A stretch of DNA of 64,000 nt, from the NCBI RefSeq assembly GCF_023055435.1, contig NW_025964223.1, positions 38,750,001 through 38,814,000 on the forward strand, in the 5' to 3' direction. A program made the translations under genes and the position numbers. Below the pieces are notes generated by a model. That model searched no databases, had not been told where the DNA came from, and saw nothing but the letters and a program-made list of their open reading frames with translations. Origin of the DNA: Haliotis rufescens (Eukaryota). This document shows, piece after piece, positions 2,049 to 64,000 of this stretch. Each line of letters opens with the position of its first letter. Within the stretch, counting starts at the first letter, position 1.

Positions 2049-2069
2049 GCTCCGTTCTAATGTTATCTA

Positions 2070-7518: not shown

Positions 7519-7552
<34 letters not shown>

Positions 7553-37507: not shown

Positions 37508-37513
37508 TTTATT
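37508..37513 (-). terminator. AATAAA polyadenylation signal of peptide gene copy A (also 51542-51547 for B and 62759-62764 for C)
   Basis: About 60 nt downstream of the stop codon in all three copies. Confidence 0.7.
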
Positions 37514-37575
37514 GACCGATGTTTACACATGTGCACATAGTGTCCTCACCGAGGCAGGAAACATGAACCGTGGAA

Positions 37576-40500
37576 CTATTCCCTCATCATAGACTCTTCC
37601 AGAGACCGCGCAAAGTCAGCATCTGAAATGATATCAACATATAAAGTGGTCATAACTATATGGCATTTAAATCATTGTATAGCCTATAGGAATAAGTGTC
37701 AGCACATCAGACTTTATTGTCTTTTTTAGGAATCATGCCGACGGGTACGATGACACGCAACAGATCAAGTCACCTATCCTGCCCAGCCAACCCATTTTGT
37801 GGCGTTTTACGACAAGCATACCTAATATATGTGCCAATTAAAGACTTTCAATACAGGTGTACAACTTAAATATTGGTATTTTTAGTTGAAACAGGTCTTA
37901 TACGTTACGTACAATCCCCGACATAATGTATTATGGGACGATACTTCTGTATACCCTTATCTATCCGAATTGTGGAAACGTCGGTCGATTGTACGATTCT
38001 TCCTGGTAAATATTTGATTGATGCAAAATGTTGTCTCAGTACATTCAGCTTGAACAGCGAAACGGTGAATTTCGATTGCAGTGAGATCACGACGTGTTAT
38101 ATTAGCTTGATGTGGGACGTTTACTTCTTTGATGCAACTTACGAAACACTCATGGCGAATCCGTGATTCGCACCGACGATTATAGGTTTCTGTCACGCCA
38201 GACTTACTCAACTGGTCATAGCGAATTGCAAACCGTACGGCAACTGTCTGGGCCAGTCCGTAGAGAAGTCGAAAAGTGCCAGAGTTGGAAGGATGATGTG
38301 GAAATCATTAAATCACATCTTAGATAGGTACATGTATAATTAAATATCCAGGCATACCTGACCCATGACATTAATTCAGAAACAAGATGAATACATACCC
38401 CTGTCTGTGAGTTTCAAGATGTTGTTTAGGCTTTCTTCAAATTCACCGAGACTCACGGTGGCATCACCTTTGGTTAAACATAAGATTATTAATAATTAAT
38501 AATTTTACATCGCTTCACATCAACATGTATGTTCCACAGGTATTTGACTGGGTCTTGTTTCACTAATGCATCCTATTCCTTTTTATTAATTGAAAAAATG
38601 GCATTTGGATGAAATCGGATATGAACAGTAATTACAACTTTTGGATCAAGTGCTTGAAGGAAACACCGTTTTAATAATGTAATAAAAGTATATAAAAATT
38701 AAATCATATACGTCATAATTTCCTAAGCCCCTTACGACCTTGACTAACTGTGAGTGAATGAGGTGTTGGGTTTAAGGCAGCTTTGAACAGTATTTCATTT
38801 ATGAAATAGTGTGTAAGATTCATGTGACAATAAAGCTCAGAGTGGCACATGTCTTAGACGTTTATTTCTGTGGGCTAACCCACGGGCACGGGCGTGATGC
38901 TAATAAAACCCAAAATCATAATCAGGCCATTCCGATATTTGAACCCAGGAAACGATCAAGAGACATCTAAACAGAATTTCGATTGAGCTATCCGTGGTTA
39001 CCTGACTAAAGCAGAGATATGCTGCTGAGGAACAAAGAAGCATAATCGGGGCACCTTCGACACCATGTACATAATCTGTAAGGTCTGGAACTGTACAAAG
39101 AGACAGACGTCTGCTTAACAATACAGCCCTGTTCTTTTAAAGTAATAAAGCTGGATTTCACCATATTAACTTTTATGTACTGAGCATGTGGGCATCGAAT
39201 GGATGTTTTGAACTCATGAGTAGTTCCTGCTGGGTGACTTCTGCATGATTATTTATCGGATCATGATGCCAAGTATATCGGATTGGCACATCACATCGAT
39301 AACAGTATCAGATATATGATAATTTAAGAGTATTTGAATGTGTATAATGCGTATGTTGTAATGTTAGTGTACATGAAAATGAAATGAAGTGTTATTTGTA
39401 GCTGAACGAGCTGAACGAATACCCATCATGTTATCGAGACAGTTATTTGTAAAATCAGGCATCAGGTAACAAAGGGACTCAATGTTTTTTGATGGTCCCG
39501 TATGAAAGAACTATCAGAGTAGTATTTATATTTAACCAATGACGTTTTGATAAATTTCCACATACCCCGCTACAGCGGTGTACAGCTGGGAAAACTATAC
39601 CCGGCTGCGATGGCAACATGCGTTGTTTTATGGTTGTTGTTTTTTTTATCTCTGTGGGATCTCTATAATCTCTCACTGCAACACCTTACAGCAAAACGGC
39701 GTCGCGTAGTGCATCTTACCATTGACTTTAGATCTACGTGAAGCCAACGAACATCATTGTGACAGTCTACGCACAGCGACGTGACAGTCTACGCACAGAG
39801 ACGTGACAGAGTCAAAGTGCAGAGACGTGACAGGGCCAACGAACTGCGTAGTGACAGTCTACGTACAGAGACGTGACAGAGCCAACGAACAGCGTCGTGA
39901 CAGTCTACGCACAGAGACATGACAGAGCCAACGAACAGCGTCGTGACAGTCCACGTACAGAGACGTGACAGAGCCAAAGAACAGCGTCGTGACAGTCTAC
40001 GTACAGAGACGTGACAGAGCCAACGAACAGCGTCGTGACAGAGCCAACGAACAGCGTCGTGACAGTCCACGTACAGAGACGTGACAAAAAGCCAACGAAC
40101 AGCGTCGTGACAGTCCACGTACAGAGACGTGACAGAGCCAACGAACAGCGTCGTGACAGTTTACGTACAGAGACGTGACAGAGTCTACGTACAGAGACGT
40201 GAGAGCCAACGAACAGCGTCGTGACAGTCTACGTACAGAGACGTGACTGTCTACGTACAAAGACGTGACAGAGCCAACGAACAGCGTCGTGACAGTCTAC
40301 GTACAGAGACGTGATAGAGTCTACGTACAGAGACGTGACAGAGCCAACGAACAGCGTCGTGACAGAACCAACGAACAGCGTCGTGACAGTCCACGTACAG
40401 AGACATGACAGAGCCAACGAACAGCGTCGTGACAGTCCACGTACAGAGACGTGACAGAGCCAACGAACAGCGTCGTGACAGTCTACGTACAGAGACGTGA

Positions 40501-43500
40501 TAAAGTCTACGTACAGATACGTGACAGAGCCAACGAACAGCGTCGTGACAGAGCCAACGAACAGCGTCGTTACAGTCCACGTACAGAGACGTGACAGAGC
40601 CAACGAACAGCGTCGTGACAGAGCCAACGAACAGCGTCGTGACAGAGCCAACGAACAGCGTCGTGACAGTCCACGTACAGAGACATGACAGAGCCAACGA
40701 ACAGCGTCGTGACAGTCCACGTACAGAGACGTGACAGAGCCAACGAACAGCGTCGTGACAGTGCCAACGAACAGCGTCGTGACAGTCCACGTACAGAGAT
40801 GTGACAGAGCCAACGAACAGCGTCGTGACAGTCTACGTACAGAGACGTGACAGAGCCAACGAACAGCGTCGTGACAGAGCCAACGAACAGCGTCGTGACA
40901 GTCCACGTACAGAGACGTGACAAAAAGCCAACGAACAGCGTCGTGACAGTCCACGTACAGAGACGTGACAGAGCCAACGAACAGCGTCGTGACAGTTTAC
41001 GTACAGAGACGTGACAGAGTCTACGTACAGAGACGTGAGAGCCAACGAACAGCGTCGTGACAGTCTACGTACAGAGACGTGACTGTCTACGTACAAAGAC
41101 GTGACAGAGCCAACGAACAGCGTCGTGACAGTCTACGTACAGAGACGTGACAGAGTCTACGTACAGAGACGTGACAGAGCCAACGAACAGCGTCGTGACA
41201 GAGCCAACGAACAGCGTCGTGACAGTCCACGTACAGAGACATGACAGAGCCAACGAACAGCGTCGTGACAGTCCACGTACAGAGACGTGACAGAGCCAAC
41301 GAACAGCGTCGTGACAGTCTACGTACAGAGACGTGATAAAGTCTACGTACAGATACGTGACAGAGCCAACGAACAGCGTCGTGACAGAGCCAACGAACAG
41401 CGTCGTTACAGTCCACGTACAGAGACGTGACAGAGCCAACGAACAGCGTCGTGACAGAGCCAACGAACAGCGTCGTGACAGAGCCAACGAACAGCGTCGT
41501 GACAGTCCACGTACAGAGACATGACAGAGCCAACGAACAGCGTCGTGACAGTCCACGTACAGAGACGTGACAGAGCCAACGAACAGCGTCGTGACAGTGC
41601 CAACGAACAGCGTCGTGACAGTCCACGTACAGAGATGTGACAGAGCCAACGAACAGCGTCGTGACAGTCTACGTACAGAGACGTGACAGAGCCAACGAAC
41701 AGCGTCGTGACAGTCCACGTACAGAGACGTGACAGAGCCAACGAACAGCGTCGTGACAGTCCACGTACAGAGACGTGAAAGACCAAACGAACAGCGTCGT
41801 GACAGTCTACGTACAGAGACTTGACAGAGCCAACGAACAGCGTCGTGACAGAGCCAACGAACAGCGTCGTGACAGTCCACGTACAGAGACGTGACAGAGC
41901 CAACGAACAGCGTCGTGACAGTCCACGTACAGAGACGTGACAGAGCCAACGAACAGCGTCGTGACAGTCCACGTACACAGACGTGATAGAGTCTACGTAC
42001 AGAGACGTGACAGAGCCAACGAACAGCGTCGTGACAGAGCCAACGAACAGCGTCGTGACAGTCCACGTACAGAGACATGACAGAGCCAACGAACAGCGTC
42101 GTGACAGTCCACGTACAGAGACGTGACAGAGCCAACGAACAGCGTCGTGACAGTCTACGTACAGAGACGTGATAGAGTCTACGTACAGAGACGTGACAGA
42201 GCCAACGAACAGCGTCGTGACAGAGCCAACGAACAGCGTCGTTACAGTCCACGTACAGAGACGTGACAGAGCCAACGAACAGCGTCGTGACAGAGCCAAC
42301 GAACAGCGTCGTGACAGAGCCAACGAACAGCGTCGTGACAGTCCACGTACAGAGACATGACAGAGCCAACGAACAGCGTCGTGACAGTCCACATACAGAG
42401 ACGTGACAGAGCCAACGAACAGCGTCGTGACAGAGCCAACGAACAGCGTCGTGACAGTCTACGTACAGAGACGTGACAGAGCCAACGAACAGCGTCGTGA
42501 CAGTCTACGTACAGAGACGTGACAGAGCCAACGAACAGCGTCGTGACAGTCCACGTACAGAGACGTGACAGAGCCAACGAACAGCGTCGTGACAGTCCAC
42601 GTACAGAGACGTGACAGAGCCAACGAACAGCGTCGTGACAGTCTACGTACAGAGACTTGACAGAGCCAACGAACAGCGTCGTGACAGAGCCAACGAACAG
42701 CGTCGTGACAGTCCACGTACAGAGACATGACAGAGCCAACGAACAGCGTCGTGACAGTCCACGTACAGAGACGTGACAGAGCCAACGAACAGCGTCGTGA
42801 CAGTCTACGTACAGAGACGTGATAGAGTCTACGTACAGAGACGTGACAGAGCCAACGAACAGCGTCGTGACAGTCTACGTACAGAGACGTAACAGTGTCT
42901 ACGTACAGAGACGTGACAGAGACGTGACAGCGACGACAAACACTTCCCATCTCAATCTCCGTTGGTTTTCAAATTCTGGTAAAATGGTTCTAGGCATATC
43001 CCTCCGTTCGAATTACTCTCTTTTTGGCCATTTACCCCGTTTACCTCGAGTAGACATCTCGTATTCTCCTCGTGAAAAGCCGACCACAAATAATATAGTC
43101 ACAATAACGCTACTGACTGCAATGTCTAAATGTGTACCTACCATCTGTATCGGCCAAACTCAAGAACTCCTCAGCGTCCCGAGCTTCGAATATCTTCTCG
43201 GCCTCTGATTGGTCAATCTGTCCGTCCTCATTCAGATCATAACTTTCAGTGTTGCGCTTTCCACCTGACATAAAAGACGGGGTATATCACCGAGTTGTAC
43301 TACATAATGTTGTAATAGATATGTGAAAAACGTTTATAACAATAGATTTTACACGATCACAAAGCCGATCATGTACATAGTTAAAGAGGTTTACTAAGGG
43401 CAACTGACAATTCTAGCAAACTTGATTTCAGTAAACTTGTTTTATGATCACCTCAGTTTATGATCACCACAATTCTTCAGACAAAATGTCACATTTTGAA

Positions 43501-43889
43501 GCAAGTCATTAGTTTAAAAATCGTGTGTGTTGAAGCAGCTTGCATTGTCTCAATGTATGACAAAAAACACAAAATGTATAAAGTTTACGCCTGATTTAGA
43601 CAGCTGTGCTATAAACATTTAGTACACACAGATTTCCAATTACGCCATATGCGATTCATGATTAACTAAGACTTATCTAAAGACAAAACTCAAAACCAAA
43701 AGAGATTTTCACAATACGCGTTGTAAGCTTCACGATGACTTTACCTATAAGGGCTGTTGCTATAGGCAGGACTGTGCGCACAACCCTGATAACTCTTGGG
43801 ACTCGGATACGAATCCTGAGCCATCGGCGACGAGCGTCGACATCTTGCAGCACCAGAACTGCCACTAGGAACAACAACGCCAGACGCAT
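37576..43889 (-). CDS. Secreted cationic peptide precursor, copy A (127 aa): signal peptide / RRRWLRIRIRVPRVIRVVRTVLPIATALIG / GKR / acidic two-EF-hand propeptide; candidate antimicrobial peptide. Coding exons 43889-43745, 43264-43142, 38467-38399, 37622-37576
   Basis: All introns are GT-AG, phase 1; 384 nt, open. Translation: MRLALLFLVAVLVLQDVDA RRRWLRIRIRVPRVIRVVRTVLPIATALIG GKR NTESYDLNEDGQIDQSEAEKIFEARDAEEFLSLADTDGDATVSLGEFEESLNNILKLTDRDADFARSLEESMMRE*. Exons are conserved in the paralog while flanking introns diverge. The function is inferred. Confidence 0.85.
39740..42935. repeat. CpG-rich composite satellite (24-bp gacagagccaacgaacagcgtcgt plus 22-bp gacagtccacgtacagagacgt) with an 836-bp higher-order period, in an intron of copy A
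   Basis: Variant units recur at 836-bp spacing (40081/40917; 40497/41333/42169). Confidence 0.92.
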
Positions 43890-44773
43890 CTGTGGAGATC
43901 AACAATATCGGGGGTGAGCTACGAGGCCCTGTACAACATGAAGACCTGATAATTAATAATCAGTTTAACTTAGGCTTCCAAACATAGACACACAGATCTT
44001 ACATTGACTCCTTGCCATTTTCGTGGTGGTAGGGCTGGGGGTTTTGAGGAGTGCGGTTGTTTGCGGGTGGGAAGAGGGTGATCACTGCACATGCAAATGT
44101 TCCAGGGACGGCATTACCAGGTTACATGTATACAGTGGGCGATAAGGCAGCCAACTTGACAAAACGAATACCGGCGTTAGATTCTCCGCTAGTGACCGGG
44201 TTGTTATTCAGCCTTGGGACCAACAAAGTTTACAGGTCTTTACAATGTGATCACTACCCCTAGTGTACAGTACATTCACTCTACGCAGTCAACATAACCA
44301 ACTCGTCCGATGGTAGTTGACCATCTGCTGGAAACACGAACATACGAACATAGACCAGAAACACAAGTGAGAAAACGTGTGGTGTCACCCTGGGCAAGTA
44401 ACTTATTTCAAATGTGCCAGGGAATGGGTACCCGATATGTGATGTACAACGTGGATGTAAAAACTCTCTAGCCTAGGCTGTATACTCCTAAGGGAGTTGA
44501 CAATGACAGCCGGCATGCAAACTGGGCGGGGAACAAATATAACAGCATTTAAGCAGATACTAGTATCTGGATACCTGCGATATATAAATGTGTTATATAA
44601 TAATATTATGATAACAATATATATTAGAGATGCATACACACGTTGATATTAACATTAGGAATTTTAGAGACAATATTATATATCATAAATCATTATTATC
44701 ATCGGGTTATAAGGAGTATGTACACAAGGGCACGAGTAGGCAAGTAGATGGTTGATCTTGAGTGTCATGGCAC

Positions 44774-45553
44774 NNNNNNNNNNNNNNNNNNNNNNNNNNN
44801 NNNNNNNNNNNNNNNNNNNNNNNNNNNNNNNNNNNNNNNNNNNNNNNNNNNNNNNNNNNNNNNNNNNNNNNNNNNNNNNNNNNNNNNNNNNNNNNNNNNN
44901 NNNNNNNNNNNNNNNNNNNNNNNNNNNNNNNNNNNNNNNNNNNNNNNNNNNNNNNNNNNNNNNNNNNNNNNNNNNNNNNNNNNNNNNNNNNNNNNNNNNN
45001 NNNNNNNNNNNNNNNNNNNNNNNNNNNNNNNNNNNNNNNNNNNNNNNNNNNNNNNNNNNNNNNNNNNNNNNNNNNNNNNNNNNNNNNNNNNNNNNNNNNN
45101 NNNNNNNNNNNNNNNNNNNNNNNNNNNNNNNNNNNNNNNNNNNNNNNNNNNNNNNNNNNNNNNNNNNNNNNNNNNNNNNNNNNNNNNNNNNNNNNNNNNN
45201 NNNNNNNNNNNNNNNNNNNNNNNNNNNNNNNNNNNNNNNNNNNNNNNNNNNNNNNNNNNNNNNNNNNNNNNNNNNNNNNNNNNNNNNNNNNNNNNNNNNN
45301 NNNNNNNNNNNNNNNNNNNNNNNNNNNNNNNNNNNNNNNNNNNNNNNNNNNNNNNNNNNNNNNNNNNNNNNNNNNNNNNNNNNNNNNNNNNNNNNNNNNN
45401 NNNNNNNNNNNNNNNNNNNNNNNNNNNNNNNNNNNNNNNNNNNNNNNNNNNNNNNNNNNNNNNNNNNNNNNNNNNNNNNNNNNNNNNNNNNNNNNNNNNN
45501 NNNNNNNNNNNNNNNNNNNNNNNNNNNNNNNNNNNNNNNNNNNNNNNNNNNNN
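44774..45553. other. Assembly gap in intron 1 of copy A, followed by a (TAC/TAT)n microsatellite at 45554-45641
   Basis: N run, then ctattactgctactatt... Confidence 1.
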
Positions 45554-45944
45554 CTATTACTGCTACTATTACCACTACTACTATTACTACTACTACTATT
45601 ACTGCTACTATTACTACTACTACTATTACTATTACTACTACGTATACTAGGCCATGTAAAAAGCACAATATTCCACACTACTGAGGGGTATGTCAAAAGT
45701 TCATGACACTATACTAGCATCTTCAGCTCCCTGGGGAGTATACAAACCACACTGCCTGTTTGGCACTTGAATGTTTCGAAGTTCACAAACCCATAACAAA
45801 CCCACGAACAACACGTTACAACGCTAACTACATTGACTTATTTTATGTACACTCGCCCTTCGTTGTTGGAAATGAGAACTTTCAGGTTAACACACTACAA
45901 AACACGTCGACGTACGGGTACCCCAAATAAACATAGTAACTCAC

Positions 45945-45997
45945 CTTGTAGAATCGAATGAAGAGATAAATCTGCATTATACCTGTCTCCTTATATA
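45945..45997 (-). promoter_or_regulatory. Predicted TATA box (TATATAA, 45997-45991) and short non-coding exon 1 ending at 45945 for copy A
   Basis: Consensus donor AAG|GTGAGT about 50 nt downstream of the TATA box. Splicing to the cag|ATG acceptor at 43889 gives the start context CAAG-ATG. Confidence 0.65.
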
Positions 45998-49638: not shown

Positions 49639-49751
49639 TAGGGGAATTTCCTCGTAACTCTCCATTCTTTAAAAACAATGGTCCTCGGCCCCTCCGGTGC
49701 CTCTGCTCCATTATTTTTAAGGAATGGAGAGTCACTCGAACATTCCCCTCT
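49639..49751. repeat. Imperfect palindrome of about 110 bp (likely end of a non-autonomous element); duplicate at about 60838-60950
   Basis: aggggaat...ctctccattctttaaaaacaatgg-loop-ccattatttttaaggaatggagag...attcccct; one arm recurs at about 49056-49083. Confidence 0.6.
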
Positions 49752-51609
49752 ACGTAATCGACACTGATTATTCTCTGGCATTGGCGTTTCATATTTCAGA
49801 AACTCATCAGCTCAAAACTCATAATACTATTCCTTTAAATAATTCTAATCATCGCTTCCTTTTATATTCGCAAACTGTTATTTGAGATACTCGTTGTAAT
49901 TACCCGAAACATCCCATAATAGGTGAATATCATCAACATCTCTCCACTTGTTCCTGCATGTACATTTAATATTCTGTAGGTGTCCGCAAAATAACACAGA
50001 CCTGGGCAAGCCGAGCAGAACTAGAAATGTATGCTCGTGTCTACACAGAGCTAATAAAAAATAATGAATTTCTATCACCATGCATCTTCCCGAGGCAAGG
50101 GCGTTAACTGACCATGCAAAGTCCAGTTTCCACCCTTTAGCCGAACTAGACAACATGCAGATTTCAGTGGAATGAAGGATTGCAAAGCATGTGCACGCCA
50201 TCTGGGCGTCGACTGATATTTTGCAAATCTTTTCATGTTCTCTCATGGTGTAATTTGATGCACTTCGCTAGGTTTATGCCCGTTTCCTTACAATATAGAA
50301 CCTGTTATATACAACCAAACACCTTGCTCACTCATATACGTATACTAACAGCAGTCGTGGTGACTAGGTAACACGGCTGATAAACGGACATGCACAGTTT
50401 GCTCCCTCTTGCTTCGGTATGTCGCTGACATGTTTCGTAGTGAATCCTGCATCTCCAGTACAATAAACCTCTCCTGCCTTTATCTTGCTGATTGTATACA
50501 CGAAACCACCATCACACAAATAACTACAACCTCAGGGCGTGGGAAAAGTGGGTGAGTGAGTATGGTTTTACGCCGCTTTTAGCAATATTCCAGCAATATC
50601 ACGGCGGGGGTCACCAGAAATGGGCTTCACACATTGTACCAATGTCGGGGATTGAACCCGGGTCTTCGGCGTGACGAGCAAACGCTTTAACCACCAGGCT
50701 TTTAACCACCGCCCAGGGCGTGGGAAGACATGTCGAATGAGATGCACATAACTTCAGCAAATTATATGTATAGGGGAAAACACGCCTCCGAGGTTTGGGT
50801 TGAAAACTTAGGGGTAGTGTTTTCCCTGGCTGGAAGTGAAAATTAAGTTTTGCTTCTGCTATTTAATTCATTCCAAACTGTATAATGTCCCTTTGAATCA
50901 GGTAATATCCTAATAGATCATGTTCCCCTGCCAAGTTGATGTACATAACTCTTACTAACAAACTTTCTGTCCCTATCATCTTGAAAAGTGTCTGGAAATG
51001 GTGTAATCTATTCCGGTAGATAGAAATATTAGAACGTTGAAGATAACGTTACAAGATCTTGGTATATTATTATTCGACCACTCTTCCTCCACGAACTGAT
51101 CCGAACGCTAGCATCAACATAATGATTTTGATGAAGTTTGCATTTCAAAATCATTTAGCAAAAGTCATATCACGAAGGGCAAAATGAGAAATGACTTGTT
51201 TATAGTTCTGGATTCAAACTAGGACCTTCGGCTCGTAACCAACAATTCGGCCACCATGTTACATATAGGACTCTTTCATTGACAATAATATCTCTACACG
51301 GTTTAGCACAAAATTCCAATCTGTATAAGATATAATTATGTCATTGATGTTTTAAGTGTAAGCACGTAAAGTGATCTCCATCGACCAGAACGACGAGAGG
51401 ACACAAGGAATTAACATAATTGACACTAAATATAGAACTGGACAAACACAAGTAACCCGCAGATAATTGACTATTTCAAGATTTTAGTTTAAGTTAAAAT
51501 CAAAACACGATCAAAACAGTCAATAGTTTTAACAATGCAAATTTATTGACCGATGTTTACACATGTGCACACAATGTGCTAACCGAGGCAGGAAACATGA
51601 ACCGTGGAA

Positions 51610-54600
51610 CTATTCCCTCATCATAGACTCTTCCAGAGACCGCGCAAAGTCAGCATCTGAAATGATATCAACATATAAAGTGGTCATAACTCTATGGCAT
51701 TTAAGTCATTGTATAGCCTATAGGAATAAGTGTCAGCACATCAGACTTTATTGTCTTTTTTAGGAATCATGCCGACGGGTACGATGACACGCAACAGATC
51801 AAGTCACCTATCCTGCCCAGCCGACCTATTTTGTTGCCTCCTACGACAAGCATATGTAATATATGTGACAATAATTTTTTTTAATTACATGTGTACAACT
51901 TAAATATTGGTATTTTTAGTTGAAACAGGTCTTATACGTTACGTACAATCCCCGGCATAATGTATTATGGGACGATACTTCTGTATACCCTTATCTATCC
52001 GAGTTGTGGATACGTCGGTCGATTGTACGATTCTTCCTGGTAAATATTTGTTTGATGCTAAATGGTTTTTTCAGTAGATTCAGCTTGAACAGTGAAACAT
52101 TGAATTTTGATTGCCGTTAGATCACGACGTGTCAGCTTGATGTGGGGCGTTTACTTCTTTGATGTAAACTCACGAAATACACATGACTAATCTGTGATTG
52201 GCATCCACAATTACAGGACTGAGTCACGCCAGAGCTTATCAACTGGTCACAGCGAATTGCGGATCACACGACAACTATCGGGGTCACTCCGTAGAGAAAC
52301 AAGTTCTTGTGTTGGAAGGATTTTGTGGAAAATGGGGATTTCTACACGAGTGTCTGTCGGATACCATTGATCTTACACTTAACGAGTTGTTTCAAAACGT
52401 ATCCAACGAGCGAAAGCGTCGTCGTTGTGCGTGATTTAGCGTCAGTCATGGCGTCACACAGGACGGAAACTTTAACGGTTTCTGTTGAATTCACCACATC
52501 ATTGCAATGTATATATTTGAAATTCCATAATTAATGCAACGATACTCTTCCCATGAATATTCTCAAACGCGTGACCGAGCCAAGGTATGCAACAATTAGA
52601 CGACATTACCTCCACAAATGCTACACAGTATAAAATCTGAATATTACTTTGTTTACATATCCGCAAGTACGGTTTTCCGAGCACAGTGTTCGTTTCCACA
52701 CCTAATTTATTTCCCATGATTTCATCTAGATAATTTGCATTGGTGACAAAGTCCATTTGTCATTTATTTCTAAAGTGTATGAGGAATTCAGGGATGTATA
52801 TATAGCAGTTGAGTTTGAAATATACCTGATCGAGTAGGCGTCTCATAACCGGCATTTTGTAAACACAATATGGCAGAACGTACACTTCGGCGTTAGTGTA
52901 TGTGCCTTTTCCAAAACATTCTAAAGGATTCTAGGCTCATCTGCGACGTTTCAGAATTATCATGAATGATTTGATACCCGTGATCACTAATATGCTATTT
53001 TTCTACTTAAATTATTCGAGTAAATATCCGATATTTAGATTTATAAGCACATAGTAAATAACGCTGTGAATTGTGATTTGGCGAGATTTACGATGTACCT
53101 AATTTTTCAGAGGTCACTTTCAGTAATTTGACTTTGCCCCAAATGACAGTAAATGATAAACAGAAGGGGGAATTCGAAACTGTGAAGAGTATTAGTTTGC
53201 GTGATGTATTTGGAATTTTATTCGTCTTCGAAGTGGGTGTTGAAGAGGAGGGACATATGTATCGCTGTGGCTCCAAAAAAGTTAACGTTGACATAACAAC
53301 AGATATTGTAGCTGTTAATAATAACAAACAAACTCGCAGACAAGGACGAGTTCGATCTCACACATATGTTTGATACCAGTTATCTAAAATGGGTTTCTCA
53401 CCCACAGGTGTGTAAGAAATCATTACATCACAACTTAGATGGGATTCCCGGGATACCCGCATGTCCAGGGTAGCATAGGTAAAATTTTAATCCAGGCATA
53501 CCTAATTATAATCCGTGACATTAATACAGAAACAAGATGAATACATACCCCTGTCTGTGAGTTTCAAGATGTTGTTTAGGCTTTCTTCAAATTCACCGAG
53601 ACTCACGGTGGCATCACCTTTTGTCAAACATAAGATTATTAATAATTTTACATCACTTCAAATCAACGTGTATGTTCCACAGATACGGAACTGGGGTTTT
53701 GTTACTGATGAAACAGAGGATATTTCCTGTGTCGAGTTTTAAACAGAGTTCAAAACATATTCTTGAAAGCTGCAGGACCGCTGTTAGAAACGAAGAAATA
53801 CTTGCTGGTCAAGTAACAAAATGGCGCTTTGCTAAACGAACAGTCTCGATTGACGAGTCAAATGAGAAATTTACAGCTCATAACGAAACATCTCCGAGAG
53901 AATAACAAACAACAAGAAGCGATATTAATTCCATAAATGACCATCTGTCATTATTTTGTCTTGTCAATGTGGAACCGTCAAAGTGTAATGTTCACTGCAA
54001 TGAAAATATCCCCTTTCTCAACTTCAGAAAACATTGTATATAGGTATATGATAATTATGTTCATGAACGTAAATCAAAATGTGATATTTGTACTTGAAGG
54101 GGCATTTACCCATCATGTCTGTAAGACAATTGTAAATCATGCGGTGTTATTCGATGGTTCCATGTAAAAGAAATATATGAGTAATATTTTATCTGACCAA
54201 TGACGATAAATGTTCATATATTCCGCTACAGTGGTGTACAACTGGACAAAATATACCCCGCTGTCATGGCAACATACGTTTTGGTGATAACTCTGTTATC
54301 TCTTCAACTCAAGCTACTTACTGGGAAACAGCGTCGCATCTTACTCTCCGTTTGTTTTTAAATTCTGATAAATGATAAGCATGACGGTAAGGTAAGTCGT
54401 TGTCGGCGTATCCCTCGTGGAATACAGTTCGATGTACTCTCTGGGCGGCCGTATATACCTTGTGATAAGCTTACCACTTATAATACACTCACCATAACGC
54501 TACTGACTACGACTACGAATGTGTACGTACCATCTGTATCAGCCAAACTCAAGAACTCCTCAGCGTCCCGAGCTTCGAATATCTTCTCTGCCTCTGATTG

Positions 54601-55257
54601 GTCAATCTGTCCGTCCTCATTCAGATCATAACTTTCAGTGTCACGCTTTCCTTCTGATGTAAAAGAAGGAGTCTTTCACATAATGTTTATGAATAGATAC
54701 GGTAAATAATTTTATAATAATGACACTTTACACGATCACAATGCAGATCCGATAAATTGTTAAAGGGGTGCAGGTTCGGATCAACTGGCAATCCCAGCAA
54801 ATGTGATTCCAGTCATCCAGCACACTTACTTTAAAATACCAGTTCACAATACATTGTGTGTATCAGTCATGATCTCAACTACTCGGACAGAATGTCACAG
54901 TTTGAAATTTACAATTCATCATGAAAATCTGGACCTTGCCTGGCCTGATTGAGTCAACTGTGTTCAATATATGTAGTGTACATAATACACAGATTTTCCA
55001 ATTACGCTAAATGCGATTCATGTTTAATTTATGGCATATTTTACGACAAAACTTAAAACAAAAACATATTTTCAAATACACGTCATAAGCTTCATGATGA
55101 ATATGTCATTACTTATAATGGCTTCTGCTATAGGCAGGACTGTGCGCACAACCCTGATAACTCTTGGGACTCGGATACGAATCCTGAGCCATCGGCGACG
55201 AGCGTCGACATCTTGCAGCACCAGAACTGCCACTAGGAACAACAACGCCAGACGCAT
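51610..55257 (-). CDS. Secreted cationic peptide precursor, copy B (127 aa): mature RRRWLRIRIRVPRVIRVVRTVLPIAEAIIK / GKR / acidic EF-hand propeptide. Coding exons 55257-55113, 54653-54531, 53617-53549, 51656-51610
   Basis: Same exon sizes as copy A (145/123/69/47), GT-AG, open frame. Differs from A by TALIG->EAIIK and by N->D after KR. Confidence 0.85.
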
Positions 55258-56141
55258 CTGTGGAGATCAACAATATCGGGGGTGAGCTACGAGGCCCTGA
55301 ACAACATGAAGACCTGATAAATAATAATCAGTTTAACTATGGCTTCCCAACATAGACACACACATCTTACATTGACTCCTTGCCATTTTCGTGGTGGTAG
55401 GGCTGGGGGTTTTGAGGAGTGCGGTTGTTTGCGGGTGGGAAGAGGGTGATCACTGCAAATGCAAATGTTCCAGGGACGGCATTACCAGGTTACATGTATA
55501 CAGTGGGCGATAAGGCAGCCAACTTGACAAAACGAATACCGGCGTTAGATTCTCCGCTAGTGACCGGGTTGTTATTTAGCCTTGGGATCAACAACGTTTA
55601 CAGGTCTTTACAATGTGATCACCACCCCTAGAGTATAGTACATTCACTCTACGCAGTCAACATAACCAACTCGTCCGATGGTAGTTGACCATTTGGTGGA
55701 AACACGAACATACGAACATAGACCAGAAACACAAGTGAGAAAACGTGTGGTGTCACCCTGGGCAAGTAACTTATTTCAAATGTGCCAGGGAATGGGTACC
55801 CGATATGTGATGTACAACGTGGATGTAAAAACTCTCTAGCCTAGGCTGTATACTCCTAAGGGAGTTGACAATGACAGCCGGCATGCAAAATAGGCGGGAA
55901 ACAAATATAACAGCATTTAAGCAGATACTAGTATCTGGATACCTGCGATATATAAATGTGTTATATAATAATATTATGATAACAATATATATTAGAGATG
56001 CATACACACGTTGATATTAACATTAGGAATTTTAGAGACAATATTATATATCATAAATCATTATTATCATCGGGTTATAAGGAGTATGTACACAAGGGCA
56101 CGAGTAGGCAAGTAGATGGTTGATCTTGAGTGTCATGGCAC

Positions 56142-56867
56142 NNNNNNNNNNNNNNNNNNNNNNNNNNNNNNNNNNNNNNNNNNNNNNNNNNNNNNNNNNN
56201 NNNNNNNNNNNNNNNNNNNNNNNNNNNNNNNNNNNNNNNNNNNNNNNNNNNNNNNNNNNNNNNNNNNNNNNNNNNNNNNNNNNNNNNNNNNNNNNNNNNN
56301 NNNNNNNNNNNNNNNNNNNNNNNNNNNNNNNNNNNNNNNNNNNNNNNNNNNNNNNNNNNNNNNNNNNNNNNNNNNNNNNNNNNNNNNNNNNNNNNNNNNN
56401 NNNNNNNNNNNNNNNNNNNNNNNNNNNNNNNNNNNNNNNNNNNNNNNNNNNNNNNNNNNNNNNNNNNNNNNNNNNNNNNNNNNNNNNNNNNNNNNNNNNN
56501 NNNNNNNNNNNNNNNNNNNNNNNNNNNNNNNNNNNNNNNNNNNNNNNNNNNNNNNNNNNNNNNNNNNNNNNNNNNNNNNNNNNNNNNNNNNNNNNNNNNN
56601 NNNNNNNNNNNNNNNNNNNNNNNNNNNNNNNNNNNNNNNNNNNNNNNNNNNNNNNNNNNNNNNNNNNNNNNNNNNNNNNNNNNNNNNNNNNNNNNNNNNN
56701 NNNNNNNNNNNNNNNNNNNNNNNNNNNNNNNNNNNNNNNNNNNNNNNNNNNNNNNNNNNNNNNNNNNNNNNNNNNNNNNNNNNNNNNNNNNNNNNNNNNN
56801 NNNNNNNNNNNNNNNNNNNNNNNNNNNNNNNNNNNNNNNNNNNNNNNNNNNNNNNNNNNNNNNNNNN
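56142..56867. other. Assembly gap in intron 1 of copy B
   Basis: N run at the position homologous to the copy A gap. Confidence 1.
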
Positions 56868-57159
56868 CATGTAAAAAGCACAATATTCCACACTACTGAG
56901 GGGTATGTCAAAAGTTCATGACACTATACTAGCATCTTCAGCTCCCTGGGGAGTATACAAACCACACTGCCTGTTTGGCACTTGAATGTTTCGAAGTTCA
57001 CAAACCCATAACAAACCCACGAACAACACGTTACAACGCTAACTACATTGACTTATTTTATGTACACTCGCCCTTCGTTGTTGGAAATGAGAACTTTCAG
57101 GTTAACACACTACAAAACACGTCGACGTACGGGTACCCCAAATAAACATAGTAACTCAC

Positions 57160-57212
57160 CTTGTAGAATCGAATGAAGAGATAAATCTGCATTATACCTG
57201 TCTCCTTATATA
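57160..57212 (-). promoter_or_regulatory. Predicted TATA box (57212-57206) and non-coding exon 1 ending at 57160 for copy B
   Basis: Identical to 45945-45997. Confidence 0.65.
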
Positions 57213-60200: not shown

Positions 60201-61758
60201 TGCAGGGCCAGGTAACACCTGTGTCATCGCTGTGACGTCGTTCTATTGTTTGAACACTCCATTTTTTTCAGGAATGGAGAGTTGTTTGTCAACTATACAT
60301 TATCTTGAATCAACATTTAAATGACTTCAACTTGGAACAGACGGAACTATTTTTTTACATTTATTGACAAGTGAATAATTTCATTTTTTCGGAAAACATG
60401 TGTCGCCAGGCGGGGTTCGAATCCGCATTGTTTGATCTGAGGTCGTGTCATTGTCAACCTCAGCTAGGGCGGCACATGAAGGTATGGTGTGAAATTAACT
60501 AATAAATATTTTCATAATTTTGCATAATGCTTAAAAGCTAGTATATATTCTGTGTTAGAGCAGGTTACCTACAAAAATGTTTATAGTTATATCAATTAAA
60601 TCAATTAGATCAATAAATAATAGTTCAGGACACACCGAGATTATGAAGAGCCGTGTACCATGCATTGTAAATGTTAGCTCGCGACGTAGCTTGGTGCACG
60701 TGCAACAGCGACAGAGAACGTATTCCTCGTGCATCACACAGTATAAATACAGACGACAAAGAGTTCTGGTTTATTTTTCAAATATTTTCCACAACAGAAT
60801 ATTTTGTCAAAGTGTAAAAGTAGGGATGAGTTTTAAGTAGGGGAATTTCCTCGTAACTCTCCATTCTTTAAAAACAATGGTCCTCGGCCCCTCCGGTGCC
60901 TCTGCTCCATTATTTTTAAGGAATGGAGAGTCACTCGAACATTCCCCTCTACGTAATCGACACTGATTATTCTCTGGCATTGGCGTTTCATATTTCAGAA
61001 ACTCATCAACTCAAAACTCATAATACTATTCCTTTAAATAATTCTAATCATCGCTTCCTTTTATATTCGCAAACTGTTATTTGAGATACTCGTTGTAATT
61101 ACCCGAAACATCCCATAATAGGTGAATATCATCAACATCTCTCCACTTGTTCCTGCATGTACATTTAATATTCTGTAGGTGTCCGCAAAATAACACAGAC
61201 CTGGGCAAGCCGAGCAGAACTAGAAATGTATGCTCGTGTCTACACAGAGCTAATAAAAAATAATGAATTTCTATCACCATGCATCTTCCCGAGGCAAGGG
61301 CGTTAACTGACCATGCAAAGTCAAGTTTCCACCCTTTAGCCGAACTAGACAACATGCAGATTTCAGTGGAATGAAGGATTGCAAAGCATGTGCACGCCAT
61401 CTGGGCGTCGACTGATATTTTGCAAATCTTTTCATGTTCTCTCATGGTGTAATTTGATGCACTTCGCAAGGTTTATGCCCGTTTCCTTACAATATAGAAT
61501 CTGTTATATACTCTTATAATTACAACCAAACACCTTGCTCACTCATATACGTATAATAACAGCAGTCGTGGTGACTAGGTAACACGGCTGATAAACTGAC
61601 ATGCACAGTTTGCTCCCTCTTGCTTCGGTATGTCGCTGACATGTTTCGTAGTGAATCCTGCATCTCCAGTACAATAAACCTCTCCTTCCTTTATCTTTCT
61701 GATTGTATACACGAAACCACCATCACACAAATAACTACAACCTCAGGGCGTGGGAAGA

Positions 61759-61922
61759 GTGGGTGAGTGAGTATGGTTTTACGCCGCTTTTAGCAATATT
61801 CCAGTAATATCACGGCGGGGGTCACCAGAAATGGGCTTCACACATTGTACCCATGTCGGGGATTCAACCCGGGTCTTCGGCGTGACGAGCAAACGCTTTA
61901 ACCACCAGGCTATCCGACCGCC
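61759..61922 (-). mobile_element. tRNA-derived SINE with 15-bp TSD
   Basis: TSD cagggcgtgggaaga at 61744 and 61923; the duplicate insertion is at 50549-50713. Confidence 0.85.
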
Positions 61923-62826
61923 CAGGGCGTGGGAAGACATGTTGAATGAGATGCACATAACTTCAGCAAATTATATGTATAGGGGAAAACACGCCTCCGA
62001 GGTTTGGGTTGAAAACTTAGGGGTAGTGTTTTCCCTGGCTGGAAGTGAAAATTAAGTTATGCTTCTGCTATTTAATTCATTCCAAACTGTATAATGTCCC
62101 TTTGAATCAGGTAATATCCTAATAGATCATGTTCCCCTGCCAAGTTGATGTACATAACTGTTACTAACAAACTTTCTGTCCCTATCATCTTGAAAAGTGT
62201 CTGGAAATGGTGTAATCTATTCCGGTAGATAGAAATATCAGAACGTTGAAGATAACGTTACAAGATCTTGGTATATTATTATTCGACCACTCTTCCTCCA
62301 CGAACTGATCCGAACCCTAGCATCAACATAATGATTTTGATGAAGTTTGCATTTCAAAATCATTTAGCAAAAGTCATATCACGAAGGGCAAAATGAGAAA
62401 TGACTTCCAAACTTGTTTATAGTTCTGGATTCAAACTAGGACCTTCGGCTCGTAACCAACAATTTGGCCATCATGTTACATATAGGACTCTTTCATTGAC
62501 AATAATATCTCTACACGGTTTAGCACAAAATTCCAATCTGTATAAGATATAATTATGTCATTGATGTTTTAAGTGTAAGCACGTAAAGTGATCTCCATCG
62601 ACCAGAACGACGAGAGGACAGAAGGAATTAACATAATTGACACTAAATATAGAACTGGACAAACACAAGTAACCCGCAGATAATTGACTATTTCAAGATT
62701 TTAGTTTAAGTTAAAATCAAAACACGATCAAAACAGTCAATAGTTTTAACAATGCAAATTTATTGACCGATGTTTACACATGTGCACCCAATGTGCTAAC
62801 CGAGGCAGGAAACATGAACCGTGGAA

Positions 62827-62873
62827 CTATTCCCTCATCATAGACTCTTCCAGAGACCGCGCAAAGTCAGCAT
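62827..62873 (-). CDS. Last coding exon (DADFARSLEESMMRE*) of peptide precursor copy C; the rest lies beyond the right edge
   Basis: Identical to the terminal exons of A and B, with the tttcag acceptor and downstream AATAAA. Confidence 0.8.
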
Positions 62874-64000
62874 CTGAAATGATATCAACATATAAAGTGG
62901 TCATAACTCTATGGCATTTAAGTCATTGTATAGCCTATAGGAATAAGTGTCAGCACATCAGACTGTATTGTTTTTTTTAGGAATCATGCCGACGGGTACG
63001 ATGACACGCAACAGATCAAGTCACCTATCCTGCCCAGCCGACCTATTTTGTTGCCTCCTACGACAAGCATATGTAATATATGTGACAATAATTTTTTTTA
63101 ATTACATGTGTACAACTTAAATATTGGTATTTTTAGTTGAAACAGGTCTTATACGTTACGTACAATCCCCGGCATAATGTATTATGGGACGATACTTCTG
63201 TATACCCTTATCTATCCGAGTTGTGGATACGTCGGTCGATTGTACGATTCTTCCTGGTAAATATTTGTTTGATGCTAAATGTTTTTTTCAGTAGATTCAG
63301 CTTGCACAGTGAAACATTGAATTTTGATTGCCGTTAGATCACGACGTGTCAGCTTGATGTGGGGCGTTTACTTCTTTGATGTAAACTCACGAAATACACA
63401 TGACTAATCTGTGATTGGCATCCACAATTACAGGTCTGAGTCACGCCAGAGCTTATCAACTGGTCACAGCGAATTGCGGACCACACGACAACTATCGGGG
63501 TCACTCCGTAGAGAAACAAGTTCTTGTGTTGGAAGGATTTTGTGGAAAATGGGGATTACTACACGAGTGTCTGTCGGATACCATTGATCTTACACTTAAC
63601 GAGTTGTTTCAAAACGTATCCAACGAGCGAAAGCGTCGTCGTTGTGCGTGATTTAGCGTCAGTCATGGCGTCACACAGGACGGAAACTTTAACGGTTTCT
63701 GTTGAATTCACCACATCATTGCAATGTATATATTTGAAATTCCATAATTAATGCAACGATACTCTTCCCATGAATATTCTCAAACGCGTGACCGAGCCAA
63801 AGTATGCAACAATTAGACGACATTACCTCCACAAATGCTACACAGTATAAAATCTGAATATTACTTTGTTTACATATCCGCAAGTACGGTTTTCCGAGCA
63901 CAGTGTTCGTTTCCACACCTAATTTATTTCCCATGATTTCATCTAGATAATTTGCATTGGTGACAAAGTCCATTTGTCATTTATTTCTAAAGTGTATGAG

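What the first reader, a model, noticed from the sequence alone, without database searches (positions are those of the whole stretch)
37576..64000. Tandem gene family encoding an Arg-rich, probably amidated linear peptide fused to an acidic EF-hand propeptide: candidate undescribed antimicrobial peptide system
Seen in sequence: splicing four phase-1 GT-AG coding exons gives a 127-aa precursor in two full copies, plus a third terminal exon. It has a 19-aa signal-like segment (..DVDA), then a 30-aa Cys-free peptide with 9 Arg, one Trp, an alternating R/hydrophobic stretch (WLRIRIRV) and a hydrophobic tail. G-K-R follows, then 75 aa with 23 D/E versus 6 K/R. Established knowledge: Gly followed by a dibasic site is the prohormone convertase/carboxypeptidase/PAM amidation signal. 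A signal + cationic peptide + C-terminal extension layout occurs in piscidins, tunicate clavanins/styelins and mussel myticalins. As I recall, an EF-hand extension is known from the Cys-rich mussel mytimycin. Inference: these are membrane-active host-defence peptides. I do not recognise this combination as a named gastropod family, but cannot establish novelty without a search.
Basis: partly seen in the sequence, partly recalled or inferred. Interest (0 to 1): 0.92.

Follow-up and report, generated by a model that had tools for sequence, protein, structure and literature searches.

The report
Abalone arginine-rich peptide gene family

Summary
On the minus strand, two complete genes and the last exon of a third each give a 384-nt reading frame of 127 aa. 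It is built from four GT-AG, phase-1 coding exons, with a short 5'UTR exon upstream. Spliced contigs from four public runs (three species labels, three studies) show exactly the predicted junctions, and one run also carries a poly(A) tail. Both assembly gaps lie in the 5'UTR intron, outside the coding sequence.

The genome is Haliotis rufescens. RefSeq already models the three genes, but only as 'uncharacterized protein'.

The family is much larger than the window. The genome holds at least 58 EF-hand-exon copies on 7 contigs, plus a more diverged cluster. All relatives found are from Haliotis. Every member examined has a signal peptide, a Cys-free Arg/Trp-rich peptide (19-44 aa, net +3 to +18), an invariant G-K-R, and an acidic double EF-hand.

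No paper found names the family. First readers of this scan noted the same family at other places in this genome.

An antimicrobial role is the best reading (about 0.6) but is inferred only. Processing, amidation, tissue of expression and activity are untested.

Closest known analogues are the mussel myticalins (overall layout) and mytimycins (EF-hand extension). I rate it a new variant of a known kind.

The parts
45945..45985 (-). Copy A exon 0 (5'UTR exon; holds an upstream in-frame ATG used by the 138-aa RefSeq model). A TATATAAGG box lies just upstream. The 5' end is approximate.
   Evidence: The letters equal the loose 5' ends of the transcript contigs. The donor is GT.
44774..45553 (.). 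Assembly gap inside intron 0 of copy A (the 5'UTR intron). It is not in the CDS.
   Evidence: the gap lies between exon 0 and the ATG exon.
43745..43889 (-). Copy A coding exon 1: ATG, the 19-aa signal and 29 residues of the Arg-rich peptide, ending in phase 1.
43142..43264 (-). Copy A coding exon 2: the last peptide residue, G-K-R, the first EF-hand (DLNEDGQIDQSE) and the start of the second loop.
39769..42921 (.). Minisatellite of 3.15 kb (46-nt unit, about 68 copies) inside intron 2 of copy A. It is absent from copy B.
38399..38467 (-). Copy A coding exon 3: the rest of the second EF-hand (..GDATVSLGEFEESLNNILKLTDR).
37490..37622 (-). Copy A coding exon 4: the last 14 codons, the TAG stop at 37578-37576 and the 3'UTR, with AATAAA at 37513. 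The 3' end is placed by homology to copy B.
57160..57200 (-). Copy B exon 0 (5'UTR exon), with a TATA-like box at about 57212-57204.
   Evidence: and the loose ends at 55259.
56142..56867 (.). Assembly gap inside intron 0 of copy B. It is not in the CDS.
55113..55257 (-). Copy B coding exon 1 (peptide tail ..PIAEAIIK instead of ..PIATALIG).
54531..54653 (-). Copy B coding exon 2 (G-K-R plus the first EF-hand).
   Evidence: (joints 54653|55113 and 53615(+2)|54529(+2)).
53549..53617 (-). Copy B coding exon 3 (second EF-hand).
51524..51656 (-). Copy B coding exon 4 and 3'UTR: stop at 51612-51610, AATAAA at 51547, poly(A) addition at 51524.
   Evidence: (joint 51656|53549; a loose run of 21 T at 51524).
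62741..62873 (-). Copy C terminal exon and 3'UTR. The rest of copy C lies beyond base 64000, at C445:38814761-38816467.
   Evidence: The RefSeq model of copy C is P0070.

Best explanation
These are three tandem paralogues (repeat unit about 11.2 kb) of a Haliotis-restricted multigene family of prepropeptide genes.

Shown:
- Each gene is transcribed from a five-exon unit, spliced exactly as predicted and polyadenylated.
- It encodes a signal peptide, a 30-aa Cys-free peptide with 9 Arg, G-K-R, and a 75-aa acidic domain with two canonical EF-hand loops.
- The same layout recurs in about 60 loci of the red abalone genome and in three other abalone species. Signal peptide, G-K-R and EF-hands are conserved, while the cationic segment is highly variable.

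Inferred:
- The signal peptide is removed after DVDA.
- In the Ca2+-rich secretory pathway, the Ca2+-loaded acidic EF-hand pair (net -17 or -18) neutralises, and possibly holds, the +9 peptide.
- A furin/PC-type convertase cuts after K-R, a carboxypeptidase trims K-R, and peptidylglycine alpha-amidating monooxygenase uses the Gly to leave a C-terminal amide (..ALIG-NH2 in copy A; ..AIIK-NH2 in copies B and C).
- The freed peptide acts as a membrane-active host-defence (antimicrobial) peptide. The Arg/Trp N-terminal half would bind anionic microbial surfaces. Its alternating R/hydrophobic stretch fits an amphipathic strand. The hydrophobic tail would insert into the bilayer.
For: Gene model, splice sites and phases.

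Transcription and splicing:
- Spliced 448-450-nt contigs have exactly the predicted joints in four runs from three studies. A poly(A) tail is seen in one run (X7).
- Contig depth is about 100-10,000 over exons and near 0 in several intron bins.
- The genome holds exon 1 only at the three intron-bearing loci, so the contigs do not come from a retrocopy.
- Fourteen runs guessed to be RNA, from six studies, hold 7-14% of the words of the gene, about the exon share.

Identity: RefSeq models from H. rufescens and H. cracherodii are identical over the 127 aa.

Family size: 58 EF-hand-exon hits at E<=1e-5 on 7 contigs, plus a diverged cluster at C445:5.09 Mb.

Family range: 35 profile hits, 33 named Haliotis (rufescens, cracherodii, asinina, rubra) and two unnamed fragments.

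Conserved architecture:
- G-K-R and the EF-loop ligand positions are invariant or nearly so in 29 sequences.
- Mature segments are 19-44 aa, net +3 to +18, with 0 Cys and 1-4 Trp. Pro-regions are net -8 to -22.

EF-hand:
- Pfam EF-hand_1 scores 26.0 bits against a cut-off of 25.4.
- In the AF2 model, the EF region has pLDDT 74-86.
- All listed structural matches are EF-hand proteins: Foldseek probability 0.5-1.0, about 1.0 for the best rows, and Z 5.7-7.7.

Precedent: a conserved signal and pro-region with a hypervariable cationic core is the pattern reported for myticalins (PMC5577615). An EF-hand extension after a dibasic site is reported for mytimycin (PMC8004829).
Against: - No experiment or dataset here shows cleavage, amidation, antimicrobial activity, tissue of expression or induction by infection. 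Run identities were coded, so the tissue is unknown.
- The signal peptide was judged by eye (hydrophobic core, V at -3, A at -1), not with SignalP.
- The runs are only guessed to be RNA, although the splicing and the poly(A) tail argue that they are.
- Runs of Arg and the RxxR motif inside the 'mature' part could themselves be convertase sites, so the real N-terminus is uncertain.
- The EF-hand part is the better conserved half, which also fits a reading in which it is the functional product.
- pN/pS gives no clear sign of positive selection (0.2-0.5 in most pairs, one at 1.0).
- Peptide/pro-domain co-folding gave no verdict.
- The NF-kB-like motif count in the window is at chance level.
Confidence: 0.6

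Rival explanations
1. The acidic EF-hand domain is the functional secreted product: a small extracellular Ca2+-binding protein, for example for shell or mucus mineral handling, or S100-like metal binding. The basic N-terminal segment would be an accessory piece (sorting, condensation in granules, polyanion binding) that may or may not be cut off.
For: - The EF-hand half is more conserved than the cationic half, with the Ca-liganding positions invariant.
- Structural matches include S100 proteins and calmodulin lobes.
- Annotation pipelines call some members 'calcium-binding protein 5-like'.
- The Atlas shows several mollusc-only clusters of small EF-hand proteins of similar size, a lead only.
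Against: - The invariant G-K-R directly between the two halves is a processing and amidation signal, which would be pointless if the N-terminal part were only a linker.
- The cationic segment keeps its high charge, Trp and lack of Cys through very large sequence change, which indicates selection on its physico-chemistry.
- Cathelicidins and myticalins also have pro-regions more conserved than their active peptides.
Confidence: 0.15
2. The genes are precursors of signalling peptides (neuropeptide, hormone or pheromone-like) rather than of effectors.
For: A signal peptide, a single peptide and Gly plus a dibasic amidation site is the classical neuropeptide precursor layout. Amidation is typical of such peptides.
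Against: - About 60 tandemly amplified, fast-diverging copies do not fit receptor-ligand constraint.
- Net charge of +9 to +18 with Arg runs is untypical of neuropeptides.
- Contig depth is very high in many small whole-tissue-type runs.
Confidence: 0.08
3. The peptides are cytolytic or cell-penetrating effectors aimed at eukaryotic cells (deterrent or toxin in mucus, anti-parasite, antiviral, or gamete-interaction factors) rather than antibacterial ones.
For: - Poly-Arg plus Trp is the hallmark of cell-penetrating peptides.
- Abalone are known, from general knowledge, for fast-evolving cationic reproductive proteins.
- Other first readers of this scan also wrote 'antimicrobial/cytolytic'.
Against: Nothing here separates this reading from the antimicrobial one, and both can be true. 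The family has no sequence relation to lysin or sp18. The four runs laid out carry three species labels and come from three studies, and the tissue is unknown.
Confidence: 0.12

Closest known systems
Myticalins and modiocalins (linear cationic antimicrobial peptides of Mytilus and Modiolus; PMC5577615, PMC12294457)
   Same: - Tripartite precursor: signal, Cys-free cationic Arg-rich peptide, K-R site (often preceded by Gly for amidation), then an anionic C-terminal extension.
- Multigene, tandemly clustered and lineage-specific.
- Signal and extension are conserved while the mature part is hypervariable.
- A 5'UTR intron ends right before the ATG, and a phase-1 intron follows the peptide exon.
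   Different: - Different signal sequence (MRLALLFLVAVLVLQDVDA against the consensus MKGxxLLLLTIxxALCMIxECEG).
- No Pro/Tyr repeats in the peptide.
- Four coding exons instead of two, and the K-R site lies on the exon after the peptide exon.
- The extension is a folded double EF-hand, not an unstructured acidic tail.
- Found in a gastropod, not a mussel.
- No detectable sequence similarity: none appeared among the hits.
Mytimycins (Cys-rich antifungal peptides of Mytilus; PMC8004829)
   Same: After the mature peptide and a dibasic site comes an anionic C-terminal extension of 75 aa that contains an EF-hand. This is the same length and the same kind of domain as here.
   Different: - The mature mytimycin is a 54-aa peptide with 12 Cys, whereas the peptide here is linear with 0 Cys.
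- Mytimycin occurs in bivalve haemocytes.
- Whether the two EF-hand extensions are homologous was not tested, because no mytimycin sequence was available by reference.
Cathelicidins (vertebrates)
   Same: The same evolutionary logic: a conserved pro-domain plus signal peptide carrying very different cationic 'warheads' that are released by proteolysis.
   Different: The pro-domain there is a cystatin-like cathelin domain placed N-terminal to the peptide, with no EF-hand. The two are unrelated in sequence and taxon. This comparison rests on general knowledge.
Arg/Trp-rich linear antimicrobial peptides (indolicidin, tritrpticin, PR-39 class) and Arg-rich cell-penetrating peptides
   Same: Composition and presumed mode of action: guanidinium groups bind phosphate, and Trp anchors at the membrane interface. 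This comparison rests on general knowledge.
   Different: No sequence relation and different precursors. The abalone peptides add a long hydrophobic C-terminal tail.
Known abalone antimicrobial peptides (hdMolluscidin, macins/HdMac, defensin, abhisin, haliotisin; review PMC11767717)
   Same: Same host genus. hdMolluscidin is also linear and rich in dibasic residues.
   Different: [quoted passage not shown] The others are Cys-rich peptides or fragments of larger proteins. None has this architecture.

Membership tests
Myticalin/modiocalin family | Conserved signal peptide (consensus MKGxxLLLLTIxxALCMIxECEG) and detectable similarity in the signal or C-terminal extension | tested here: not met
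   The signal is MRLALLFLVAVLVLQDVDA. The profile search returned only Haliotis-named proteins and two unnamed fragments, and no Mytilus proteins. The consensus is taken from PMC5577615.
Myticalin/modiocalin family | Gene architecture: a 5'UTR exon with its intron just before the ATG; one exon holding signal, mature peptide and dibasic site; a phase-1 intron; one last exon | tested here: inconclusive
   The 5'UTR intron before the ATG and the phase-1 intron after the peptide exon are present. However, K-R lies on the next exon, and two further phase-1 introns split the extension.
Mytimycin family | Mature peptide of about 54 aa with 12 conserved Cys | tested here: not met
   There is no Cys in the mature segment of any of the 34 family members examined.
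Mytimycin family | EF-hand-containing anionic extension of about 75 aa after a dibasic site | tested here: met
   75 aa after G-K-R, holding two EF-hand loops. Homology of the two extensions was not tested.
EF-hand domain (Pfam PF00036 / EF-hand pair) | A 12-residue Ca-binding loop with ligands at positions 1, 3, 5, 7, 9 and 12, flanked by helices and occurring in pairs | tested here: met
   - Loop 1 is DLNEDGQIDQSE and loop 2 is DTDGDATVSLGE (Ala instead of Gly at position 6).
- PF00036 scores 26.0 bits against a cut-off of 25.4. The EF-hand_7 pair model spans residues 56-101 but scores below its cut-off, 21.6 against 30.
- All structural matches listed are EF-hand proteins, Z 5.7-7.7.
- Ca2+ binding itself was not measured.
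Amidated secretory peptide precursor (prohormone-type processing) | N-terminal signal peptide | tested here: inconclusive
   The segment has a Met-Arg n-region, a 12-residue hydrophobic core, and V at -3 and A at -1 before RRRW. The equivalent sites in paralogues are SDA|W, TEG|L and SVG|W. No signal-peptide predictor was available.
Amidated secretory peptide precursor (prohormone-type processing) | Gly followed by a dibasic site directly after the peptide | tested here: met
   G-K-R is invariant in 29 of 29 aligned members and present in the genomic paralogues.
Amidated secretory peptide precursor (prohormone-type processing) | Actual cleavage and C-terminal amide in the animal | not testable with these tools
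   This needs peptidomics.
Antimicrobial (host-defence) peptide, functional class | Cationic and amphipathic, encoded by a fast-diversifying multigene family | tested here: met
   Net charge is +9 with 53% hydrophobic residues, and the hydrophobic moment is 0.98 at a strand angle of 170 degrees against 0.83 at 100 degrees. The genome holds 58 or more loci. The mature region diverges fastest.
Antimicrobial (host-defence) peptide, functional class | Microbicidal activity, expression in immune or barrier tissue, induction by infection | not testable with these tools
   Run identities and tissues were coded, and no assay was possible.

The most novel reading that the evidence does not exclude
Abalone have evolved, on their own or from an ancient molluscan module shared with the EF-hand extension of bivalve mytimycins, a cathelicidin-like system of about 60 genes. 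In it, a Ca2+-loaded EF-hand pair works as a built-in, calmodulin-like chaperone or safety catch. It holds a hypervariable Arg/Trp-rich amidated peptide inactive until convertase cleavage. This would be the first large family of linear antimicrobial peptides in gastropods and a new type of antimicrobial-peptide pro-domain mechanism.
Probability: 0.3. Interest if true: 0.85.

Novelty: new variant of a known kind. Interest (0 to 1): 0.72.

Why it matters
- Gastropod antimicrobial peptides are poorly known. For abalone, a major aquaculture animal hit by Vibrio, withering syndrome and herpesvirus, the recent review I read (PMC11767717) names only molluscidin, macins and peptides derived from larger proteins such as hemocyanin and LGBP.
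- A family of about 60 genes for linear cationic peptides, apparently highly expressed and found here only in abalone, would be the gastropod counterpart of the mussel myticalins.
- It would offer dozens of natural sequence variants for structure-activity work, and candidate markers for disease resistance.
- The folded Ca2+-binding pro-domain is unusual. It makes a specific idea testable: that an EF-hand lobe can act as an intramolecular inhibitor of a cationic amphipathic peptide, much as calmodulin binds melittin.
- It also raises a testable evolutionary question: is this domain the same as the one on bivalve mytimycins, that is, an old molluscan pro-domain reused with different 'warheads'?

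Tried and rejected
- Word-indexed protein search with the exon-1 reading frame: no hits. The explanation came later: the RefSeq models are 138 aa, above the tool's length window for that query.
- Search with P0070 alone: it found only itself. The profile search was needed.
- Profile search of the representative library with the exon-2 alignment: the top 150 were swamped by multi-EF-hand repeat proteins. Only four single-stretch, full-length hits were family members. It therefore says little about occurrence outside Haliotis.
- ESM Atlas: only generic EF-hand clusters, with scores under 0.9. These are leads only.
- Complex prediction of the pro-domain (53-127) plus 2 Ca against the peptide (20-49): score 0.18, no verdict. 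This is no evidence either way.
- Pfam on single exons: EF-hand models scored below their cut-offs. Full-length models reach the cut-off.
- pN/pS between paralogues: no clear positive selection. Copy A against copy B has 3 non-synonymous and 0 synonymous changes in the peptide tail, and 1 against 3 in exon 2, but the counts are tiny.
- NF-kB-type motif GGGRNNYYCC: 4 found against 3.07 expected, so it is at chance level.
- Literature: nine searches by keywords, peptide motifs, LOC identifiers and product name found no description of the family. Subscription journals and supplementary files are not covered.
- Joined spliced protein: I handed no joined protein to any search tool. Searches used single exons by reference and, later, the RefSeq proteins that the tools returned. 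The only join was a local equality check in a script.
- Homology between the mytimycin and abalone EF-hand extensions was not tested, because no mytimycin sequence was available by reference.
- Rejected readings: the gaps interrupting the CDS (they are intronic), and the spliced contigs coming from a retrocopy (the genome holds only intron-bearing copies).
Full report
**1. What is in the sequence**

The gene copies lie on the minus strand. ORF listing and direct reading show an ATG exon encoding MRLALLFLVAVLVLQDVDA followed by RRRWLRIRIRVPRVIRVVRTVLPIA.. It occurs twice, at 43889 and at 55257.

A scan for conserved AG..GT-bounded open pieces found the small third exon. An acidic-window scan found the terminal exon in three copies.

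A local script confirmed both complete models:
- Copy A: 43889-43745, 43264-43142, 38467-38399, 37622-37576.
- Copy B: 55257-55113, 54653-54531, 53617-53549, 51656-51610.
- Every intron is GT-AG and phase 1. The CDS is 384 nt, giving 127 aa.
- The 75 residues after G-K-R hold 23 (A) or 24 (B) D/E against 6 K/R.

The third copy has only its last exon in the window. Its other exons follow directly after base 64000.

**2. The assembly gaps**

Transcript contigs carried extra 5' letters that did not fit next to the ATG exon. Those letters occur in the window at 45947-45965 and 57162-57180, ending in ..CTACAAG|GTGAGT, with a TATATAAGG box just upstream.

Each gene therefore has a short 5' exon. The N runs at 44774-45553 and 56142-56867 sit inside the intron between that exon and the ATG exon. 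They do not touch the reading frame, and the RNA links both sides. I did not fill them or look them up.

The 5' exon contains an in-frame ATG. This explains why RefSeq models are 138 aa (MQIYLFIRFYK plus the 127 aa). H. cracherodii has both a 127-aa and a 138-aa model. The longest transcript contig reaches about 8 nt upstream of that ATG, so which start is used is open. Either start gives a signal-like N-terminus and the same processed products.

**3. Is it expressed?**

Fourteen runs guessed to be RNA, from six studies and three species labels, hold 7-14% of the sampled words of the 3.9-kb gene. That is about the exon fraction.

I laid four of them on copy B:
- Joints fall at 51656|53549, 53617|54531 and 54653|55113, all CT..AC on the plus strand, which is GT..AG on the gene strand.
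- Single contigs of 448-450 nt cover all coding exons.
- A run of 21 T marks a poly(A) tail at 51524, 23 nt after AATAAA.
- Contig depth is about 100 to 10,000 over exons, while several intron bins are empty.

The genome has exon 1 only at the three intron-bearing loci. The spliced form is therefore RNA, not a retrocopy. The depths suggest an abundant transcript, but contig depth is a poor measure of expression. Tissue and condition are unknown, because run identities are coded.

**4. Whose gene is it?**

A profile of the EF-hand exon found four single-domain proteins among many generic EF-hand hits. Cluster look-up names them 'uncharacterized protein' of Haliotis rufescens, on a contig of 63,335,689 bp, the length of the window's contig. 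Relatives occur in H. cracherodii and H. asinina.

P0152, P0153 and P0070 are copies A, B and C. The gene models are therefore public, but without name or function.

**5. A much larger family**

Searching the whole assembly with the EF-hand exon gave 57 places at E<=1. With a family profile it gave 58 places at E<=1e-5, one of them carrying an in-frame TGA. They are distributed as follows:

| Contig | Position | Hits |
|---|---|---|
| C146 | 7.49-7.64 Mb and 5.57 Mb | 31 |
| C585 | | 11 |
| C379 | | 6 |
| C445 | this cluster | 3 |
| C445 | 44.16-44.23 Mb | 7 |
| C51 | | 3 |
| C179 | | 2 |
| C46 | | 1 |

Upstream of each one examined lies an exon with a related signal peptide and a different cationic segment. 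Examples are WGRRRRSWIRIRGRRIINGAIRVYRVYRRYRHIINPAV.., LFRRRRRRRWLRIRG.., WRRRRFRFRLRK.. and WGRRRRRFVRWR...

Its peptide reads as a classical Lys/Arg amphipathic helix, and its EF-hand exon again begins with GKR.

A profile search of the protein database returned 35 proteins. Thirty-three are from H. rufescens, H. cracherodii, H. asinina and H. rubra, and two are unnamed fragments.

In an alignment of 29 members, G-K-R and the Ca-liganding positions of the first loop are invariant, and those of the second loop nearly so. Mature segments are 19-44 aa, net +3 to +18, Cys-free, with 1-4 Trp. Pro-regions are net -8 to -22.

**6. The acidic domain**

- Full-length members reach the Pfam EF-hand_1 cut-off (26.0 against 25.4 bits). 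The EF-hand-pair model spans residues 56-101 but scores below its cut-off.
- An AlphaFold2 model built on the family alignment has mean pLDDT 67.6. The EF region is at 74-86. The peptide is a low-confidence helix.
- Every listed Foldseek match and every listed VIA-align row is an EF-hand protein: calmodulin lobes, troponin C, S100s, parvalbumin and calcyphosine. Z is 5.7-7.7 over model residues of about 48-118.

These scores are middling. Together with the two canonical loops, they make a paired EF-hand lobe the sound reading. Ca2+ binding itself is inferred.

**7. How it probably works**

Shown: a transcribed, spliced gene for a bipartite secretory-type protein, within a large, conserved-frame and variable-core family.

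Inferred, from established knowledge of prohormone processing:
- Signal peptidase cuts after DVDA.
- A convertase cuts after K-R, a carboxypeptidase removes K-R, and PAM converts the Gly into a C-terminal amide.
- This gives 30-residue amides with net charge of about +10.

The pro-form is close to neutral or acidic overall, so the EF-hand domain plausibly masks the peptide during synthesis and storage. Calmodulin lobes are known to bind basic amphipathic peptides such as melittin, and such complexes were among the structural matches. That makes a specific intramolecular docking conceivable. The co-folding test gave no verdict, so this stays a hypothesis.

The peptide's alternating R/I/R/I/R/V pattern scores higher as an amphipathic strand than as a helix, and two prolines interrupt it. 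A surface-bound strand or hairpin with an inserted hydrophobic tail is my best guess for its membrane-bound form.

An antimicrobial function is the most economical reading of the family pattern, but it is not demonstrated. I put it at about 0.6. The alternatives are:
- The EF-hand domain is the real product (0.15).
- The peptides are cytolytic or otherwise non-antibacterial effectors (0.12).
- The peptides are signalling peptides (0.08).

**8. Evolution within the window**

- Copies B and C are 98.5% identical over 4 kb.
- The regions upstream of A and B are 98.9% identical.
- The gene bodies of A and B are only 88.8-95.7% identical.
- Intron 2 of copy A has gained a 3.15-kb minisatellite with a 46-nt unit.

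This mosaic fits unequal crossing-over or gene conversion, as another note on this window proposed. I did not test that further.

Between A and B, the peptide tail has 3 non-synonymous and no synonymous changes, and exon 2 has 1 and 3. Across paralogue pairs, the mature region diverges fastest at both classes of site, and pN/pS is mostly 0.2-0.5. That amounts to accelerated divergence but gives no proof of positive selection.

**9. Comparison with what is known**

- Myticalins share the precursor logic, the multigene hypervariability, the 5'UTR intron before the ATG and a phase-1 intron. They differ in signal sequence, peptide composition, exon number and the nature of the extension. This family is not a member.
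- Mytimycins share a 75-aa EF-hand extension after a dibasic site but carry a 12-Cys peptide. This family is not a member either. Homology of the extensions is open.
- The abalone antimicrobial peptides listed in a 2025 review (molluscidin, macins, haliotisin and LGBP-derived peptides) do not have this architecture.
- Nine literature searches, including peptide motifs and LOC identifiers, found nothing on this family. Subscription journals and supplements are not covered.

**10. Verdict**

The novelty claim holds as far as it could be checked: the genes are annotated but unnamed and, as far as I could find, unstudied.

It is a new variant of a known kind, a linear cationic peptide precursor with an anionic pro-region. 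It is distinguished by a folded double EF-hand pro-domain, by its size of about 60 genes, and by occurring in a gastropod.

First readers of this scan flagged the same family at other places of this genome. None of those notes showed a follow-up.

Noticed in passing
window 39769-42921: A 3.15-kb minisatellite (46-nt unit, about 68 copies, 83% matches) fills intron 2 of copy A and is absent from copies B and C. It creates long spurious ORFs on both strands.
   Followed up: partly
window 45945-45985 and 57160-57200 (minus strand): The 5' exon carries an in-frame upstream ATG, 11 codons before the conserved MRL start and about 20 nt after a TATATAAGG box. RefSeq uses it (138 aa), while one H. cracherodii model does not (127 aa). 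Paralogues in other clusters start at the MRL/MKL Met.
   Followed up: partly
window 49642-49651 and 60841-60850 (plus strand): A perfect NF-kB-type decamer, GGGAATTTCC, sits at the same position in each repeat unit, about 3.6 kb upstream of the 5' exons. The count in the window (4) is no more than chance (3.07 expected).
   Followed up: partly
window 52286-52547, 53334-53464 and 53818-54119 (introns of copy B): Many short, diverged (90-95% identity) RNA-run contigs pile up on intron pieces. Similar short ORF fragments recur in the intergenic DNA. These look like dispersed repeats (SINE-like) rather than parts of this gene.
   Followed up: no
window 36000-60000: Identity between the repeat units is mosaic. 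The regions upstream of A and B are 98.9% identical, the exon-1 region 95.7%, and the 3' half of the gene 88.8%. B against C is 98.5% throughout. This suggests unequal crossing-over or conversion, in line with another note on this window.
   Followed up: partly
G000:C445:5083000-5127000 (L038 near nt 7751-8300; L041 near nt 5298-5900): A more diverged subfamily. After the signal MKIALVLLFLTAMVALPGTDS comes a 39-aa Lys/Arg helix-type peptide (WGIRLPRFRSIVRAVGG..), then GKR and an EF-hand exon (GKRDVSEFDVDGDGQVSDDE..). My exon-2 searches missed it, so the superfamily is larger than 58 loci.
   Followed up: partly
G000:C585:1488204-1488317: One EF-hand exon copy carries an in-frame TGA and is probably a pseudogene within the C585 array.
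   Followed up: no
P0185 (JGI metagenome contig of 956 nt) and P0156 (ENA contig of 502 nt): Family fragments occur in two records without an organism name. P0185 resembles the window's subfamily (..PIGKRETNAFDLNNDGHIDQAEAEKIFEKRDAE..).
   Followed up: no
window 1-37000: The rest of the window was not examined. Composition shows a strongly skewed stretch at about 6000-12000 (GC skew down to -0.83), and another reader noted a minisatellite at 12536-13235 in a methyltransferase gene.
   Followed up: no
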